Source: Octopus sinensis
Taxonomy: Eukaryota
Length of the DNA: 41,592 nt
Assembly (NCBI RefSeq): GCF_006345805.1
Contig: NW_021835438.1
Span: 1 to 41,592, forward strand
Direction: 5' to 3'
Below the pieces are notes generated by a model that searched no databases, had not been told where the DNA came from, and worked only from the letters and a program-made list of their open reading frames with translations. The position numbers were made by a program, and so were the translations under genes. Each line of letters begins with the position of its first letter. Position 1 is the stretch's first letter. Shown here piece after piece: positions 6,527 through 17,411 of the stretch.

Positions 6527-6659
6527 GCATGCAAAAACGTAAGCATAAATTTAAAGTACAAGTAAAAAAGAGTTTGATATTAATCATCCTCACACCTCAA
6601 AGTACAACAAGTATCAACCTCTGCATCAATATATATTTCTGATGTTGCATTGTTAAAGC

Positions 6660-8057
6660 CTATTTTGACACATCGATAATACCTACAACTATCCCAATAG
6701 CATGATTCTGTCTGTAACCAAAAAATTTGCAAGTGTATTTTGTTTCACAAACATAATAATTTTCCAATCCATCGGTAAAACTGACTTTGTAATCTATCAG
6801 CTGAATATCTCTATATGAACAGCGTGGTTTGGGGGTCAATACACCATTTTGACATATCACACTATCGTTGGAGTTATTCATACTAGGAAGTTCACACGAA
6901 TAAGTAACGTTCGTGGTTTCTAAGACTGTGCTGCCAAATGGAAGATATTGCAAAGTGTCTGAATTTCGGTAGCTATGTATGTTAGACTTGTATAACAATT
7001 GACAGTTCTTTACACACCGTGGAAGTTTTCCACTCCACGTTCCATTCTCTAAACATGTTCTTTTAGAATCTCCCAACAACGTTTCTTCAGCAGAACAGCT
7101 ATATTCAATAACTGAAAAATTATGTGACAAAATAAAATTCAATCCGTTTCGTTTCTCAATTTTACACGATTTTCTGCACTGTATGTTTGGATACCATTTA
7201 CCTGAAAAGCATTGAACGACTCCAAATGCGACAGGAATGAAGGATCGTTTGCACGAATATAACACTTTCTCTCCTTGATTGATTAAGGTTCTTGGTTTTA
7301 AAATTCTACCTTCAGAAATAGTCACAACTCTGCCAGCAATTTCAGGTACAACACATTTCAAAGTGCAAACAGGTGTCGGAAAATTCCAGCTACCGTCTTG
7401 AAGACAAGTTAATACATATTCACCTTTCAGACTATAAGGTTTTAAGCAACTGAAATGAATTGTTTCGTTAACTTTAACTTCATTTGTATTGTTTACCTTG
7501 CCATGTTTGGGTGGATGCGGTGGGAGACATTTAACAATTTCACAGATTGGTGGTAGAGACGACCACTGTTTATTTTCTTGACAACGTATTGAATTGTTTC
7601 CTCGCAAAATATAATCAGAAAGGCAGTAAAAGTGAATAACAGAGTTATATGTGTATGCAATATTTATCATGAAACTGTGTGCAGGTTTAGGAAAAGTAGG
7701 GCAAGTTATTAACTTACATCTTTTATCTTCATACATCCATTTACCATTCCAACAAATAATATCGGCTGTATTCTCTACACTTGCTTCAAAATTGCGGTTG
7801 CACTTTTGTTGCAGGTGTATTTTTTCCTCTTCCCATTTCAAAGTATATTGAATTCGACTGCTGTTTAATTTCGGCAAAGGACCGCAGTTTAGGAGCTTTA
7901 TCATTTGTTCAAAAAACCACGGAGCAAAGTTGTTGCAGGTTGACGTCGAATTACTGTATTCCGACACAATCTTTTTCATAACATTTGCAACTGTATTATT
8001 TTCACTCTTCACTGTGAATAAGATAAAGAATAGGAAATAAAATGTATTGGATACCAT
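6660..8057 (-). CDS. Secreted sushi/CCP (complement control module) repeat protein, copy 1: signal peptide + 6 CCP; C-terminal Cys domain truncated by a 1-bp deletion at 6706-6707 (restored stop 6580-6582)
   Basis: 465 aa single ORF; hydrophobic N-terminus MVSNTFYFLFFILFTVKS; six C..C..C..W..C modules (e.g. CPTFPKP...FYC...LRG...C...QWS..PIC); many N-x-S/T sites; paralog of 15924-17411. Confidence 0.88.
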   Translation of the reverse strand: MVSNTFYFLFFILFTVKSENNTVANVMKKIVSEYSNSTSTCNNFAPWFFEQMIKLLNCGPLPKLNSSRIQYTLKWEEEKIHLQQKCNRNFEASVENTADIICWNGKWMYEDKRCKLITCPTFPKPAHSFMINIAYTYNSVIHFYCLSDYILRGNNSIRCQENKQWSSLPPICEIVKCLPPHPPKHGKVNNTNEVKVNETIHFSCLKPYSLKGEYVLTCLQDGSWNFPTPVCTLKCVVPEIAGRVVTISEGRILKPRTLINQGEKVLYSCKRSFIPVAFGVVQCFSGKWYPNIQCRKSCKIEKRNGLNFILSHNFSVIEYSCSAEETLLGDSKRTCLENGTWSGKLPRCVKNCQLLYKSNIHSYRNSDTLQYLPFGSTVLETTNVTYSCELPSMNNSNDSVICQNGVLTPKPRCSYRDIQLIDYKVSFTDGLENYYVCETKYTCKFFGYRQNHAIGIVVGIIDVSK

Positions 8058-8157
8058 TCTCTCAGTTTTTATATACTTTTGTCTGTCATGAAAAGGACTT
8101 GTAGTGTTTAAAGTGTAGTCGCTTGTTCACTTTAATTCTAATGTCTTCTTGGGGAGT

Positions 8158-14705: not shown

Positions 14706-15923
14706 TATATATATATTATATATATATATATATATATATATATATATATAATATATATATATATATATATATTATATATATATATATATTATATATATAT
14801 ATATATATATATATGTATGTATGTATGTATGTATGTATGTATGTATGTATGTATGTACACACTCGTGCACACACACACACACGATTACATGTGCGCACGC
14901 ATGTATTTGTGAGCAGCTATGTTTTAAAATACACCAAATCCGATGAAGCTGCTGAATTTGTAAAAATTCTATTTTCGCATAACCGTAATATTTTACGTTT
15001 AAATCTGTTTGAAGGAGTGAGTCTGGGAAACGTTTCCAAAACAATAGTCAGAAAGAAAAAAAAACTATCGAAATTAGAGAAGGAAAGAATAAAATCAAAA
15101 TATTAAAATTTGGATTTTTATTTCTCAATCACAATCTTGCTTGTTTAGTACATGAAGCAGAAAATCTTTTGAAGGAAAGTTAAATAAAAACAAAAGAAAT
15201 TTTAAAATAAAGAAATCAAATACTGGAAAAGGAATTTTTTTTTTTTCAAAATCATAATCTCCATTTTATTAAACAAACTATTCTCGAACCAAAATAAGGG
15301 ATTTGCAGCATATTAGGAGGACAGTGTACTTGATTCCAAGCAAAAAAATCCGAGTTTTTTTTTTTTTTCTTTGCGAAAATCGTGCAGGTGTTACTCTGAA
15401 AAATTACCCAGTTAGCCGTCATTTTTGTCGGCACGGGGCCAAATAATATTATAATAATCTATTTGTGTAAACACATGAAAGCACTCAGCAATGAGAGAGG
15501 GGAAGTGGCAAAGAGAGCGCCAATAACAAATATAAAACTCATATGAATTATACTACACTGATCTTGGAATTGACGGTCAAGTTCAAATACTTTCTCTTGA
15601 AAACATACCCTCCTGGGACGTGATAAATAGAAATTAGTATCAAAGATCCCCGTGATACTTGAGTGCCACAACGAATGCAATTTTAAGTTGTTAAAAATGT
15701 CTTCTCAGTTTACTGATGTGTACATTTTGACTGAAAGGCCGGTTTATAAGGCGAATTTAAATTTTACGTCTGTTTCCAATTATATATATTACGATAAATG
15801 TCAGGAACAAGCACATATGCGTAAGTACAACGACTTCCATTACGTTGTCATAACTGAATGTTATGCGATGTCATAACTGAATGTAAAGATTGCAAGCAAG
15901 AACAAACATAAATTTTATGTACA

Positions 15924-17411
15924 TTAATCATCATAACATTGCATAGCACAACAATTAGTAGTCACTGCACTAATATATATTTCTGATGTTGCATTGTTAA
16001 AGTCTATGTTGGCACATAGATCGTTACTAAATAATGAACACCTACTACTAGTGCATGATTTCTGTCTGTAACCAAAAAATTCGCAAGTGTATTTTGTTTC
16101 ACAAACATAATAGTCTGACGATTTATGGGTAAACATGACTCTGGTTCGCATCAGATGAATATTTCTATGTGAACAGCGTGGTTTGGGGGTCAATACACCA
16201 TTTTGACATATCACACTATCGTTGGAGTTATTCATATTAGGAAGTTCACACGAATAAATAACATTCGTGTTTTCTAAGACTGTGCTGCCAAACGGAAGAT
16301 ATTGCAAAGTGTCTGAATTTCGGTAGCTATACATGCCAAACACGGGTAACAATTGACAGCTCTTTACACACCGTGGAAGTTTTCCACTCCACGTTCCATT
16401 CTCTAAACAGGTTCTTTTAGAATATCCCAACAATGTTTCTTCAGCAGAACAGCTATATTCAATAACTGAAAAATTATGTGACAAAATAAAATTCAATCCG
16501 TTTCGTTTCTCAATTTTACACGATTTTCTGCACTGTATGTCTGGATACCATTTACCTGAAAAGCATTGAACGACTCCAAATGCGACAGGAATGAAGGATC
16601 GTTTGCAAGAATATAACACTTTCTCTCCTTGATTGATTAAGGTTCTTGGTTTTAAAATTGTACCTTCAGAAATAGTCACAACTCTGCCAGCAATTTCAGG
16701 TACAACACATTTCAAAGTGCAAACAGGTGTCGGAAAATTCCAGCTACCGTCTTGAAGACAAGTTAATACAGATTCACCTTTCAGACTATAAGGTTTTAAG
16801 CAACTGAAATGAATTGTTTCGTTAATTTCAACTCCATTTGTATTGTTTACATTGCCATGTTTGGGTGGATGCGGTGGGAGACATTTAATAGTTTCACAAA
16901 CTGGTGGGAGAGACGACCACTGTTTATTTTCTTGACAACGTATTGAATTGTTTCCTCGCAAAATATAACCAGACAGGCAGGAAAAGCGAATAACAGAGTT
17001 ATATGTGTATGCAACATTTATCATGAAACTGTTTGCAGGTTTAGGAAAAATCGGGCAAGTTATTAACTTACATTTTTTATCTTCATACATCCATTTACCA
17101 TTCCAACAAATAATATCGGCCATATTCTCTACGCTTGCTTCAAAATAGCGGTTGCACTTTTGTTGCAGGTGTATTTTTTCCTCTTCCCATTTCAAAGTAT
17201 ATTGTATTTGACTGTTGTTTAATTTCGGTAAAGGACCGCAGTTTAAGAGTTTTATCATTTGTTCAAAAAACCACGGAGAGAAATTGTTATCAGTTGACGT
17301 CGAATTACTGTATTCCGACACAATCTTTTTCATAACATTTCCAACCGTATTATTTTCACTCTTCACCGTTAATGTAATTAATAAAATAATATAAAATGCT
17401 CTGGATACCAT
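15924..17411 (-). CDS. Secreted sushi/CCP repeat protein, copy 2: signal peptide + 6 CCP + 8-Cys C-terminal domain
   Basis: 495 aa single ORF; MVSRAFYIILLITLTVKS signal peptide; six CCP modules; tail CETKYTC...SCTSSRC...LC...CCAMQCYDD; no transmembrane segment seen. Confidence 0.92.
   Translation of the reverse strand: MVSRAFYIILLITLTVKSENNTVGNVMKKIVSEYSNSTSTDNNFSPWFFEQMIKLLNCGPLPKLNNSQIQYTLKWEEEKIHLQQKCNRYFEASVENMADIICWNGKWMYEDKKCKLITCPIFPKPANSFMINVAYTYNSVIRFSCLSGYILRGNNSIRCQENKQWSSLPPVCETIKCLPPHPPKHGNVNNTNGVEINETIHFSCLKPYSLKGESVLTCLQDGSWNFPTPVCTLKCVVPEIAGRVVTISEGTILKPRTLINQGEKVLYSCKRSFIPVAFGVVQCFSGKWYPDIQCRKSCKIEKRNGLNFILSHNFSVIEYSCSAEETLLGYSKRTCLENGTWSGKLPRCVKSCQLLPVFGMYSYRNSDTLQYLPFGSTVLENTNVIYSCELPNMNNSNDSVICQNGVLTPKPRCSHRNIHLMRTRVMFTHKSSDYYVCETKYTCEFFGYRQKSCTSSRCSLFSNDLCANIDFNNATSEIYISAVTTNCCAMQCYDD

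What the first reader, a model, noticed from the sequence alone, without database searches (positions are those of the whole stretch)
6580..17411. Tandem family of intronless secreted 6-CCP proteins with an unrecognised 8-Cys tail
Both genes are single ORFs with a TATA box about 100 nt upstream. Animal multi-CCP genes normally encode modules on separate exons, so an intronless six-module gene suggests retroposition or horizontal/viral origin followed by tandem amplification. The architecture (signal peptide, about 40 aa spacer, 6 CCP, C-x5-C-x9-C-x4-C-x(4-7)-C-x20-CC-x3-C tail, no TM) matches nothing I recognise. It may be a lineage-specific secreted recognition, complement-regulator-like or gland effector family; the function is pure inference.
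Basis: partly seen in the sequence, partly recalled or inferred. Interest (0 to 1): 0.78.

Follow-up and report, generated by a model that had tools for sequence, protein, structure and literature searches.

The report
Octopus secreted six-Sushi, SRCR-like-tailed gene family
Two neighbouring single-exon octopus genes belong to an octopod-only, tandemly expanded family of secreted proteins made of six Sushi (CCP) modules and a fast-evolving cysteine-rich tail that is most likely a shrunken SRCR domain, so the family is real but built from known immune-type parts, and one of the two copies carries a frameshift.

Summary
Two minus-strand paralogs (87% aa identity) encode a signal peptide, a roughly 40-aa helical spacer, 6 CCP modules and an 8-Cys tail, with no TM segment and a TATA box at -107/-108.

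One correction: only copy B (15924-17411, 495 aa) is an intact ORF. Copy A lacks one base at about 6706-6707. Its ORF stops at 6660 (465 aa), and the tail is readable only in another frame, down to the TAA at 6580.

The genome is Octopus sinensis, and both proteins are already in RefSeq under generic names. About 12 loci exist genome-wide: a chr3 cluster, a chr1 singleton and unplaced scaffolds; 5 of them are broken. Orthologs in O. bimaculoides and Argonauta hians are also single-exon and keep the TATA box.

The tail has no sequence relatives outside the family (Pfam; 1.84 billion representatives). Its AlphaFold model matches only SRCR domains (top 20 VIA hits, Z 6.5-3.1). A colinear octopod sister gene carries a canonical SRCR at the same position.

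The CCP body is under purifying selection (pN/pS 0.40). The tail evolves about 4x faster (1.50).

Recent copies arose by DNA duplication that includes the promoter. I found no viral relative. Another locus holds 25 Sushi modules in one open frame, so the single-exon layout is not exceptional here.

The function (a soluble mucosal or humoral recognition factor) is inferred. One paralog was detected once in skin mucus.

The parts
15924..17411 (-). Copy B: intact single-exon CDS of 495 aa. It comprises a signal peptide, a helical spacer, 6 CCP modules and an 8-Cys SRCR-like tail.
   Evidence: ORF; Pfam Sushi E 1.3e-29; AlphaFold model; a 100% identical copy on redundant scaffold C11641
17358..17411 (-). 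Copy B signal peptide, residues 1-18 (cleavage site judged by eye)
   Evidence: Hydrophobic N-terminus; predicted helix 2-17; no other TM-grade segment
17241..17357 (-). Copy B N-terminal spacer, residues 19-57: two predicted helices and 3 N-glycosylation sequons. No Pfam match.
   Evidence: the helix before CCP1 is also conserved in the chr2 sister gene
16173..17240 (-). Copy B six CCP/Sushi modules, residues 58-413. CCP1-5 keep the consensus Trp; CCP6 lacks it.
   Evidence: Foldseek hits to factor H, beta2-GPI, CR1/CR2 and CD46 at E down to 5e-20
15927..16172 (-). Copy B linker plus 8-Cys tail, residues 414-495. It is predicted to be a compact SRCR-like domain and is the fastest-evolving part of the protein.
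   Evidence: AlphaFold best model pLDDT 88.4; top 20 VIA hits all SRCR, Z 6.5-3.1; pN/pS 1.50 versus 0.40 in the body; no Pfam or sequence relatives
17512..17518 (-). Copy B TATA box (TATAAAA) at -107 from the ATG. A second TATAAAA lies at -121 (17526-17532).
   Evidence: the position is conserved in Octopus paralogs and in Argonauta orthologs
6660..8057 (-). Copy A: the ORF as assembled, 465 aa. It comprises the signal peptide, spacer, 6 CCP modules, linker and first 2 tail cysteines, then 13 frameshifted residues and TAG.
   Evidence: listed in public databases as a 465-aa protein
6706..6707 (-). Copy A frameshift site: an AA run where copy B has AAA (one base missing)
6580..6705 (-). Copy A out-of-frame remnant of the tail. 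All 6 remaining Cys codons and the family stop (TAA 6580-6582) are preserved.
   Evidence: a similar tail ending is seen in a 95-aa database fragment, P0027
8159..8165 (-). Copy A TATA box (TATAAAA) at -108 from the ATG
9447..10310 (-). Broken transposase remnant, mariner-like by eye, between the two copies. It is spacer DNA, not part of the genes.
   Evidence: ORFs; Pfam Transposase_1 E 1.2e-5 for 9447-9815 only; no Pfam hit for 9921-10310

Best explanation
The region holds two DNA-level tandem duplicates of an Octopoda-restricted, single-exon gene family in Octopus sinensis.

Each intact member encodes a secreted, heavily N-glycosylated rod. It consists of a signal peptide, a short helical spacer, six CCP/Sushi modules and a compact 82-residue C-terminal domain.

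The family shares its layout with an octopod sister gene on chr2 that has six CCPs and a canonical SRCR. Two lineages, the chr1 singleton and the chr3 cluster, already existed before Octopus and Argonauta split. The chr3 cluster then expanded by birth-and-death duplication. Copy B is intact. Copy A carries a one-base frameshift that cuts off the tail; this is a very young pseudogene or truncated allele, or an assembly error.

Inferred mechanism, not shown: the proteins are soluble recognition or scavenger-type factors of mucus or haemolymph. The conserved CCP rod would act as spacer or partner-binding stalk, and the variable SRCR-like head would act as the ligand-binding end.
For: Shown:
- The ORFs and their domains.
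- Single-exon CDS in O. bimaculoides and Argonauta.
- A TATA box conserved at -82 to -114 across the family.
- About 12 loci in the genome, 5 of them broken.
- The tree shows two lineages that predate the Octopus/Argonauta split.
- Homology between recent copies runs from -110, which includes the TATA box, to 1.1 kb past the stop.
- Purifying selection on the body: pN/pS 0.40, p=3e-9. The tail is at 1.50; tail versus body by Fisher's test, p=4e-6.

For the SRCR-like tail:
- AlphaFold tail model with pLDDT 88.4 and pTM 0.77.
- Of 48,161 PDB representatives, 24 reach Z>=2, and the top 20 are all SRCR domains: enteropeptidase, TMPRSS13/2, hepsin, CD6, CD5, CD163, SCARA5 and factor I. They align over 70-78 of 82 residues. 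The Foldseek top hits are also SRCR.
- The chr2 sister gene, 31% identical in the CCP region, has Pfam SRCR at E 4e-10 at the same position.
- MAFFT and relaxed hhalign place the tail motifs (I/V-x-L, V-C, C-x-x-[LF]-G-[FY]) on the matching SRCR motifs.

For secretion and function:
- Signal-peptide-like N-terminus, no TM segment, 12 N-glycosylation sequons.
- Paralog A0A6P7TXA6 (XP_029654565, one of the two C8178 copies, which are 75-76% identical to copy B) is listed in the O. vulgaris skin-mucus proteome (PMC10138644 Table S2).
- Sushi+SRCR architectures are common in invertebrate SRCR repertoires (PMC10855680).
Against: - Only 1 of the 5 AlphaFold tail models was confident; the others scored about 40-53. 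The alignment had 11 sequences, and in the full-length model the tail had pLDDT below 50.
- Z values of 5-6.5 lie within the range the tool calls 'middling'.
- Pfam SRCR does not hit the tail even at E<=10, and hhalign is not significant: E 0.011-0.37, probability below 4%.
- The tail has 82 residues against about 100-110 for a canonical SRCR, and its Cys spacing is unlike the canonical group A/B patterns (both SRCR figures are my knowledge).
- Tail pN/pS above 1 is not significant (p=0.095), so relaxed constraint is as good an explanation as diversifying selection.
- The proteomic evidence is 1 unique peptide and 1 PSM, for a paralog in a sister species.
- No expression, binding or localisation data exist for either window copy.
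Confidence: 0.6

Rival explanations
1. The tail is a genuinely new cysteine-rich module. The intronless 6-CCP gene entered or arose by retroposition, or by horizontal or viral transfer, and was then tandemly amplified.
For: - No Pfam hit, no profile hit outside the family among 1.84 billion representatives, and no language-model look-alike for the tail.
- hhalign against SRCR is not significant.
- All family members have a single-exon CDS.
- Non-LTR retrotransposon ORFs with endonuclease and reverse-transcriptase domains lie in the same window.
- A-runs lie 520-556 nt past the stop in three members of the youngest subclade.
Against: - The fold search returns only SRCR domains, and the colinear sister gene has a canonical SRCR.
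- There is no viral relative.
- GC content equals that of the flanks.
- The family predates the Octopus/Argonauta split.
- Paralog homology includes the TATA box and runs past the A-runs, so the amplification was DNA-based.
- Other long multi-Sushi open frames exist in this genome.
Confidence: 0.15
2. The family acts specifically as regulators or binders of the thioester protein (C3/TEP) system, as vertebrate factor H, CD46 and CR1 do. The automatic names 'complement factor H-like' imply this.
For: - The full-length model matches factor H CCP1-4 bound to C3b, CD46, CR1, DAF and Crry at E 1e-20 to 1e-9.
- TEP1 and CD109 are among the most abundant octopus mucus proteins in the same proteome that lists the paralog.
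Against: - The structural match is generic to any CCP string.
- The best non-octopod sequence hit is 23% identical.
- The architecture has an extra N-terminal spacer and an SRCR-like tail, whereas RCA proteins consist of CCP modules (my knowledge).
- No binding data exist.
Confidence: 0.15
3. The family serves reproduction or chemical communication (gamete or egg-coat recognition, mucus-borne cues) rather than immunity. The fast-evolving tail would then reflect sexual or species-recognition selection.
For: - Secreted proteins that are lineage-restricted, tandemly duplicated and carry a rapidly evolving terminal domain. This pattern is equally typical of reproductive proteins (my knowledge).
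- The one proteomic detection is in externally released mucus.
Against: - No expression data from gonad or accessory glands are available.
- CCP+SRCR combinations are better documented in immune or scavenger contexts.
Confidence: 0.15
4. About copy A only. The frameshift is an assembly (homopolymer) error and copy A is really an intact 6-CCP+tail gene, not a pseudogene or truncated variant.
For: - The break is a single missing base in a short A run.
- The out-of-frame tail keeps all 6 Cys codons, the N-glycosylation motif and the original stop codon.
- Up to the break, A versus B gives w of about 0.7 overall and 0.1-0.6 in the modules where it could be computed (CCP1, 2, 4, 5), so there is no sign of decay.
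Against: - The public annotation lists it as a 465-aa protein.
- The 99.5% identical redundant scaffold C11641 does not carry copy A at all within the 13.7 kb beyond the break of colinearity. No second read-out exists, and copy A may be structurally polymorphic.
- 4 other loci of the family are clearly broken.
Confidence: 0.4

Closest known systems
Octopod chr2 sister gene (G000:C2:195645812; orthologs XP-type proteins P0029 in O. bimaculoides and P0030 in Argonauta hians, auto-named 'SVEP1')
   Same: Single-exon CDS. The layout is colinear: signal peptide, spacer ending in a conserved helix, six CCPs and a C-terminal Cys-rich domain. It is 31% identical over the CCP region and is found only in octopods.
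   Different: - Its N-terminal spacer is about 110 residues longer.
- Its C-terminal domain is a canonical 6-Cys SRCR that Pfam recognises (E 4e-10). The family's tail is 82 aa, has 8 Cys and is invisible to Pfam.
- Only one such locus was found in this genome, against about 12 for the family.
SRCR-like domains of type II transmembrane serine proteases (hepsin, TMPRSS2/13, enteropeptidase) and classical SRCR domains (CD5, CD6, CD163, SCARA5, factor I)
   Same: The predicted tail fold superposes on them over 70-78 of 82 residues at rmsd 2.5-3.8 A, Z 6.5-3.1. They are the only fold family among the top 20 matches.
   Different: Sequence identity is 5-13%. There is no significant profile match. 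The tail is shorter, has four putative disulfides with different spacing, and is attached to a CCP rod rather than to a protease, collagen or an SRCR array.
Vertebrate RCA-type CCP proteins and beta2-glycoprotein I
   Same: A secreted string of 5-6 CCP modules. Foldseek E values are 5e-20 for mini-factor H and 1e-17 for beta2-GPI. As in beta2-GPI (my knowledge), the string ends in a specialised C-terminal module likely to do the binding.
   Different: There is no orthology; identity is about 20%. The N-terminal spacer and SRCR-like tail are extra. The gene is single-exon. Complement-regulatory activity is untested.
Invertebrate Sushi+SRCR proteins of the SRCR superfamily (e.g. expanded sea-urchin and sea-star repertoires; PMC10855680)
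   Same: Sushi and SRCR modules are combined in secreted proteins that are tandemly expanded and presumed to serve innate recognition.
   Different: Those proteins carry canonical, often multiple SRCR domains. Here a single, miniaturised, fast-evolving SRCR-like unit caps a fixed six-CCP rod, and the family is confined to octopods.

Membership tests
Sushi/CCP/SCR domain proteins (PF00084) | Pfam Sushi HMM match above the gathering score | tested here: met
   102.8 and 98.7 bits against a cut-off of 20.7
Sushi/CCP/SCR domain proteins (PF00084) | Modules of about 60 aa with 4 invariant Cys and a conserved Trp | tested here: met
   24 Cys in six modules are invariant across 14 sequences. Trp is invariant in CCP1-5; CCP6 lacks it.
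Sushi/CCP/SCR domain proteins (PF00084) | Beta-sandwich modules that match solved CCP strings structurally | tested here: met
   CCP pLDDT about 65-88, lowest in CCP1. Foldseek hits to factor H, beta2-GPI, CR1/2 and CD46 at E down to 5e-20.
Complement factor H / RCA regulators (as the public names suggest) | Orthology to vertebrate CFH/RCA genes | tested here: not met
   Outside octopods the best hit is a 23%-identical fish Sushi protein. The names are automatic.
Complement factor H / RCA regulators (as the public names suggest) | Binding of C3b/C4b-like thioester proteins, with cofactor or decay-accelerating activity | not testable with these tools
   This needs biochemical assays.
SRCR superfamily (PF00530 and SRCR-like domains) | Pfam or profile sequence match to SRCR | tested here: not met
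   No SRCR hit for any of 11 tails at E<=10. hhalign E 0.011-0.37 and probability below 4%, although the best local match is the SRCR helix motif C-x-x-L-G-F.
SRCR superfamily (PF00530 and SRCR-like domains) | SRCR fold: a curved beta-sheet packing against one short helix | tested here: met
   The tail model has 7 strands and 1 helix, pLDDT 88.4. The top 20 of the 24 VIA matches are all SRCR, Z 6.5-3.1. Caveat: only 1 of 5 models was confident.
SRCR superfamily (PF00530 and SRCR-like domains) | Canonical length (about 100-110 aa) and group A (6 Cys) or group B (8 Cys) spacing | tested here: not met
   The tail has 82 aa and 8 Cys with non-canonical spacing. The loss of the 4th and 5th Cys together in one paralog suggests a family-specific disulfide.
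SRCR superfamily (PF00530 and SRCR-like domains) | Positional homology with a bona fide SRCR in a related protein | tested here: met
   The colinear chr2 sister gene has Pfam SRCR (E 4e-10) directly after CCP6.
Processed retrogene | CDS without introns | tested here: met
   Uninterrupted ORFs in O. sinensis, O. bimaculoides and Argonauta. UTR introns could not be checked.
Processed retrogene | Copy limited to the transcript (no promoter) and ending in poly(A) | tested here: not met
   Paralog homology starts at -110, which includes the TATA box, and continues 1.1 kb past the stop and beyond the A-runs. This applies to the recent duplications only.
Processed retrogene | An intron-containing parent gene elsewhere in the genome | tested here: inconclusive
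   All hits at E<=1e-5 lie in long open frames or broken copies. Single-CCP exons at about 30% identity would fall below the threshold.

The most novel reading that the evidence does not exclude
The 82-residue tail is a miniaturised, hypervariable SRCR head found only in octopods. The chr3 cluster is then a diversified repertoire of soluble recognition molecules, secreted into skin mucus or haemolymph, in which a fixed six-CCP stalk presents a rapidly changing binding surface. That would make it a lineage-specific innate immune recognition system of cephalopods.
Probability: 0.25. Interest if true: 0.6.

Novelty: new variant of a known kind. Interest (0 to 1): 0.36.

Why it matters
Very little is known about cephalopod-specific immune or mucosal effectors. 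This work defines a compact gene family restricted to octopods: a promoter plus a single exon, six CCP modules and a cryptic SRCR-like head. It is small enough to express and test directly.

It also shows that a Cys-rich 'orphan' tail invisible to sequence profiles can be placed in a known fold by modelling plus a colinear paralog. And it corrects the automatic 'factor H / SVEP1 / P-selectin / CSMD3-like' names.

The result is of moderate interest rather than high. The parts are known domain types, the genes are already in RefSeq, and the function remains inferred.

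Tried and rejected
- Pfam on the tail and on the N-terminal spacer at E<=10 gave nothing relevant.
- A word-index search restricted to the tail found only two family members.
- An exhaustive profile search of the tail against 1.84 billion representatives found only family members. The one exception was a chance hit to a repeat protein through a K-Y-I-C-D-Y-F-G-W motif.
- The PDB sequence search with the tail profile returned only insignificant nuclear-receptor zinc-finger hits (E 0.27-0.68), which I rejected.
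- The ESM Atlas feature search and the Atlas fold search were uninformative, with TM below 0.4 to microbial clusters.
- hhalign of the tails against 3 sister SRCRs, and against 17 octopus SRCR sequences, was not significant.
- The viral-contig scan with the family alignment found no relative.
- The full-length AlphaFold model left the tail below pLDDT 50.
- I tried to verify the copy A frameshift on the redundant scaffold C11641. Colinearity ends at window ~8952 and copy A is absent there.
- The look-up of encoding contigs for the O. sinensis protein P0001 returned nothing; records from the window's own genome are withheld.
- Literature searches for the family, its accessions or 'intronless Sushi' in octopus found only the skin-mucus proteome paper.
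- I considered and rejected a GPI anchor or TM segment, because there is no hydrophobic C-terminus.
- I considered and rejected a wholly non-functional family, because of body pN/pS 0.40 and conservation back to the Octopus/Argonauta split.

Full report
**1. What is in the sequence**

The window is an entire 41,592-bp unplaced scaffold (G000:C11909) of a 2.72-Gb genome. All close protein hits are from Octopus sinensis, so that is the source.

Two minus-strand ORFs lie at 15924-17411 (copy B, 495 aa) and 6660-8057 (copy A, 465 aa). They are 87% identical in protein over residues 1-452. The shared DNA unit is 1.75 kb long, 6398-8144 versus 15756-17496, at 88.5% identity.

Pfam recognises only Sushi/CCP in both proteins, at E 1.3e-29 and 2.4e-28.

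Copy B reads as follows:
- a hydrophobic, signal-peptide-like N-terminus (residues 1-18);
- a 39-residue spacer predicted as two helices;
- six four-cysteine CCP modules (residues 58-413);

It has 32 Cys in all and 12 N-glycosylation sequons. No later segment reaches TM-grade hydropathy, and the C-terminus is not hydrophobic. A TATAAAA lies at -107 in copy B and -108 in copy A.

**2. The correction: copy A is not a single ORF through the tail**

Where copy B has AGACAGAAATC, copy A has AGACAGAATC, so one base is missing at about 6706-6707. The closest paralogs have copy B's length at this site, with at most one substitution.

In the main frame, copy A runs for 13 unrelated residues and stops at TAG 6660-6662. 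The rest of the tail survives only in the adjacent frame. It keeps six Cys codons, the N-A-T-S-E sequon and the family's stop at TAA 6580-6582.

Because the shifted tail is otherwise intact, the lesion is either very recent or a homopolymer assembly error. I could not decide between these. Scaffold C11641 is a reverse-complement copy of window ~8952-38874 at about 98-99.7% identity (three of its five 10-kb blocks were compared), and it carries an identical copy B. Colinearity ends about 0.9 kb before copy A, and no copy A lies in its remaining 13.7 kb. Public databases list both proteins, at 465 and 495 aa.

**3. The family**

A six-frame search of the genome found about 12 loci.
- Intact: copy B; two near-identical copies at chr3 132.435 and 132.442 Mb; one at chr3 132.512 Mb; two on scaffold C8178; and one on chr1 at 140.06 Mb.
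- Defective: copy A; C1188 (one TGA); C10410; and two chr3 loci with several stops or truncations.

Outside this genome, relatives come only from O. bimaculoides and Argonauta hians, at 46-83% identity. They carry unrelated automatic names: CSMD3-like, SVEP1, factor H-like and P-selectin. The next hit is a 23%-identical fish Sushi protein.

In all four O. bimaculoides and A. hians genes that I fetched, the CDS is one uninterrupted exon.

A maximum-likelihood tree shows two lineages that predate the Octopus/Argonauta split:
- chr1 singleton + Argonauta P0010;
- chr3 cluster + Argonauta P0009.

The window copies sit in the youngest chr3 subclade.

The motif G-TATAAAA-G sits at -100 to -114 in nearly all Octopus copies. 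TATATAA sits at -98 and -82 in the two Argonauta genes. This conserved core promoter right next to the ORF argues for a truly single-exon transcription unit.

**4. Selection**

Pairwise Nei-Gojobori estimates give w of about 0.15-0.5 for CCP1-5. For the linker and tail, close comparisons give w of 1 or more.

I summed three phylogenetically independent close pairs:
- body: pN/pS = 0.40, below 1 with p=3e-9;
- linker + tail: pN/pS = 1.50, not significantly above 1 (p=0.095);
- tail versus body by Fisher's test: p=4e-6.

Within the tail, the cysteines and the F-G-Y core are the most conserved positions, and the stretches between cysteines vary most. So the genes are functional, and their C-terminal domain is either under relaxed constraint or diversifying.

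dS varies several-fold along the gene. Between A and B it is 0.02-0.06 in CCP4-5 and 0.44 in the signal peptide and spacer. This suggests gene conversion in the middle of the gene, which is an inference.

**5. What the tail is**

By sequence, the tail is an orphan:
- no Pfam family at E<=10;
- only family members in a word search;
- only family members in an exhaustive profile search of 1.84 billion representatives, apart from one chance hit;
- nothing in the PDB sequence search or the ESM Atlas.

In the full-length AlphaFold model, the tail stayed below pLDDT 50. Modelled alone with an 11-sequence alignment, one of five models reached pLDDT 88.4 and pTM 0.77. It has seven strands and one short helix. 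The secondary-structure order matches that of the low-confidence full-length run.

VIA-align compared that model with 48,161 PDB representatives. Only 24 chains reached Z>=2, and the top 20 are all SRCR domains. They include enteropeptidase, TMPRSS13, hepsin, TMPRSS2, CD6, CD5, Pit54, CD163, SCARA5, LOXL2, factor I and CD5L. Z runs from 6.5 to 3.1 with 70-78 of 82 residues aligned, and then drops to 2.2. Foldseek's weak top hits are the same set.

Independent support comes from the nearest paralogous gene outside the family:
- It lies at chr2 195.65 Mb and is a 642-aa single ORF.
- It is 31% identical over the CCP region.
- It has orthologs in O. bimaculoides and Argonauta.
- It carries a Pfam-positive SRCR (E 4e-10) immediately after its sixth CCP.

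In a joint alignment the two architectures are colinear, and three tail motifs fall on matching SRCR motifs:
- the tail's I-x-L start falls on the SRCR V-R-L start;
- Y-V-C falls on G-V-C;
- C-E-F-F-G-Y falls on C-R-M-L-G-F.

The best local hhalign match against a 17-sequence octopus SRCR profile is that same helix motif. It is statistically insignificant, however, at E 0.37; against the 3 sister SRCRs alone, E was 0.011.

I therefore read the tail as a shortened, strongly diverged SRCR-like domain with extra disulfides. My confidence in that is about 0.7. One paralog has lost the 4th and 5th cysteines together, which suggests that these two pair with each other.

**6. Origin**

Between copy B and the chr3 copies, homology starts at -110. 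It therefore includes the TATA box. It runs 1.1 kb beyond the stop, past two A-runs at +556 and +678. The recent amplification was therefore DNA-level segmental duplication, not retroposition.

A scan of viral contigs found no relative. The GC content of the genes matches that of their flanks.

- the chr2 sister gene is single-exon;
- scaffold C9690 has one open frame of at least 1641 aa, running off the contig end, with 25 Sushi matches.

Whether the common ancestor of the family and its sister gene lost its introns by an ancient retroposition cannot be tested with these data. No intron-bearing parent was seen, but the search is insensitive to diverged single-CCP exons.

**7. Function (inferred)**

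The protein is a secreted, glycosylated CCP rod. Foldseek's best hits are mini-factor H, beta2-glycoprotein I, CR1/CR2 and CD46. The rod ends in a variable SRCR-like head.

CCP and SRCR modules are typical of soluble recognition, scavenger and complement-related proteins (my knowledge). Sushi+SRCR combinations are frequent in expanded invertebrate SRCR repertoires (PMC10855680).

One paralog has protein-level evidence. It is UniProt A0A6P7TXA6 = XP_029654565, one of the two copies on scaffold C8178, which are 75-76% identical to copy B. It appears in the Octopus vulgaris skin-mucus proteome at FDR below 1%, but with a single unique peptide and a single PSM, 3% coverage (PMC10138644 Table S2).

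My best guess, at about 0.35, is a mucosal or humoral recognition factor whose tail binds the ligand. Thioester-protein regulation and reproductive or chemical signalling are live alternatives.

**8. Verdict**

The feature is real. It is already annotated under misleading automatic names and is uncharacterised in the literature I could search.

It is a new variant of a known kind: CCP+SRCR secreted proteins with a miniaturised, sequence-orphan SRCR-like head, confined to octopods. It is not a new module or an imported gene. Interest is moderate.

Noticed in passing
G000:C11641 (42,128 bp) versus window 8952-38874: Scaffold C11641 is a reverse-complement duplicate of most of the window at about 98-99.7% identity, so it is a haplotig or assembly redundancy. 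Colinearity stops at window ~8952, and C11641 lacks copy A in its remaining 13.7 kb. This may be a presence/absence or insertion polymorphism, or a mis-join.
   Followed up: partly
L044 4504-9426 (G000:C9690:24503-29425): One uninterrupted open frame of at least 1641 aa, running off the contig end, gives 25 Pfam Sushi matches (E 1e-243). It is a giant multi-CCP exon or gene in the same genome.
   Followed up: partly
L015 1027-2955 (G000:C2:195645338-195647266): A single-exon 642-aa gene with a signal peptide, a long spacer, six CCPs and a canonical SRCR, conserved in O. bimaculoides (86%) and Argonauta hians (64%). It is the probable sister, and the prototype, of the family studied here.
   Followed up: yes
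window 9447-10310 (-): Two adjacent broken ORFs between the two gene copies, mariner-like by eye. Only 9447-9815 matches Pfam Transposase_1 (E 1.2e-5); 9921-10310 has no Pfam hit.
   Followed up: partly
window 23891-30128 (+) and 35872-38869 (+): Two degraded non-LTR retrotransposon copies with endonuclease (Exo_endo_phos) and reverse-transcriptase (RVT_1) ORFs. A 1.77-kb piece (28567-30331) recurs at 98.8% identity elsewhere on C11641.
   Followed up: partly
window 12089-12391 and 12455-12763 (-): Two adjacent repeat units of about 300 bp. Each pairs a (GT/CA)n-type microsatellite with the same roughly 45-codon unique stretch. This is probably a small tandemly duplicated repeat element, not a gene.
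   Followed up: no
window ~15355-15368 and ~15235-15246 (556 and 678 nt past the copy B stop); same positions in L003 and L031: A-runs of 11-17 nt lie at conserved positions downstream of three members of the youngest subclade. Paralog homology continues beyond them, so they are not retrocopy ends. They may be tails of an old inserted element.
   Followed up: partly
G000:C16:43.22-43.35 Mb: A dense array of more than 20 full-length SRCR-domain exons on one strand, presumably one or a few very large multi-SRCR genes.
   Followed up: no
L009 (G000:C3:132512286-132513758): This intact paralog has TGTAAAA in place of the conserved TATAAAA. Its public protein model (P0011, 390 aa) skips an internal stretch that is continuous in the genomic ORF (491 aa), so the annotated splice is probably artefactual.
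   Followed up: partly
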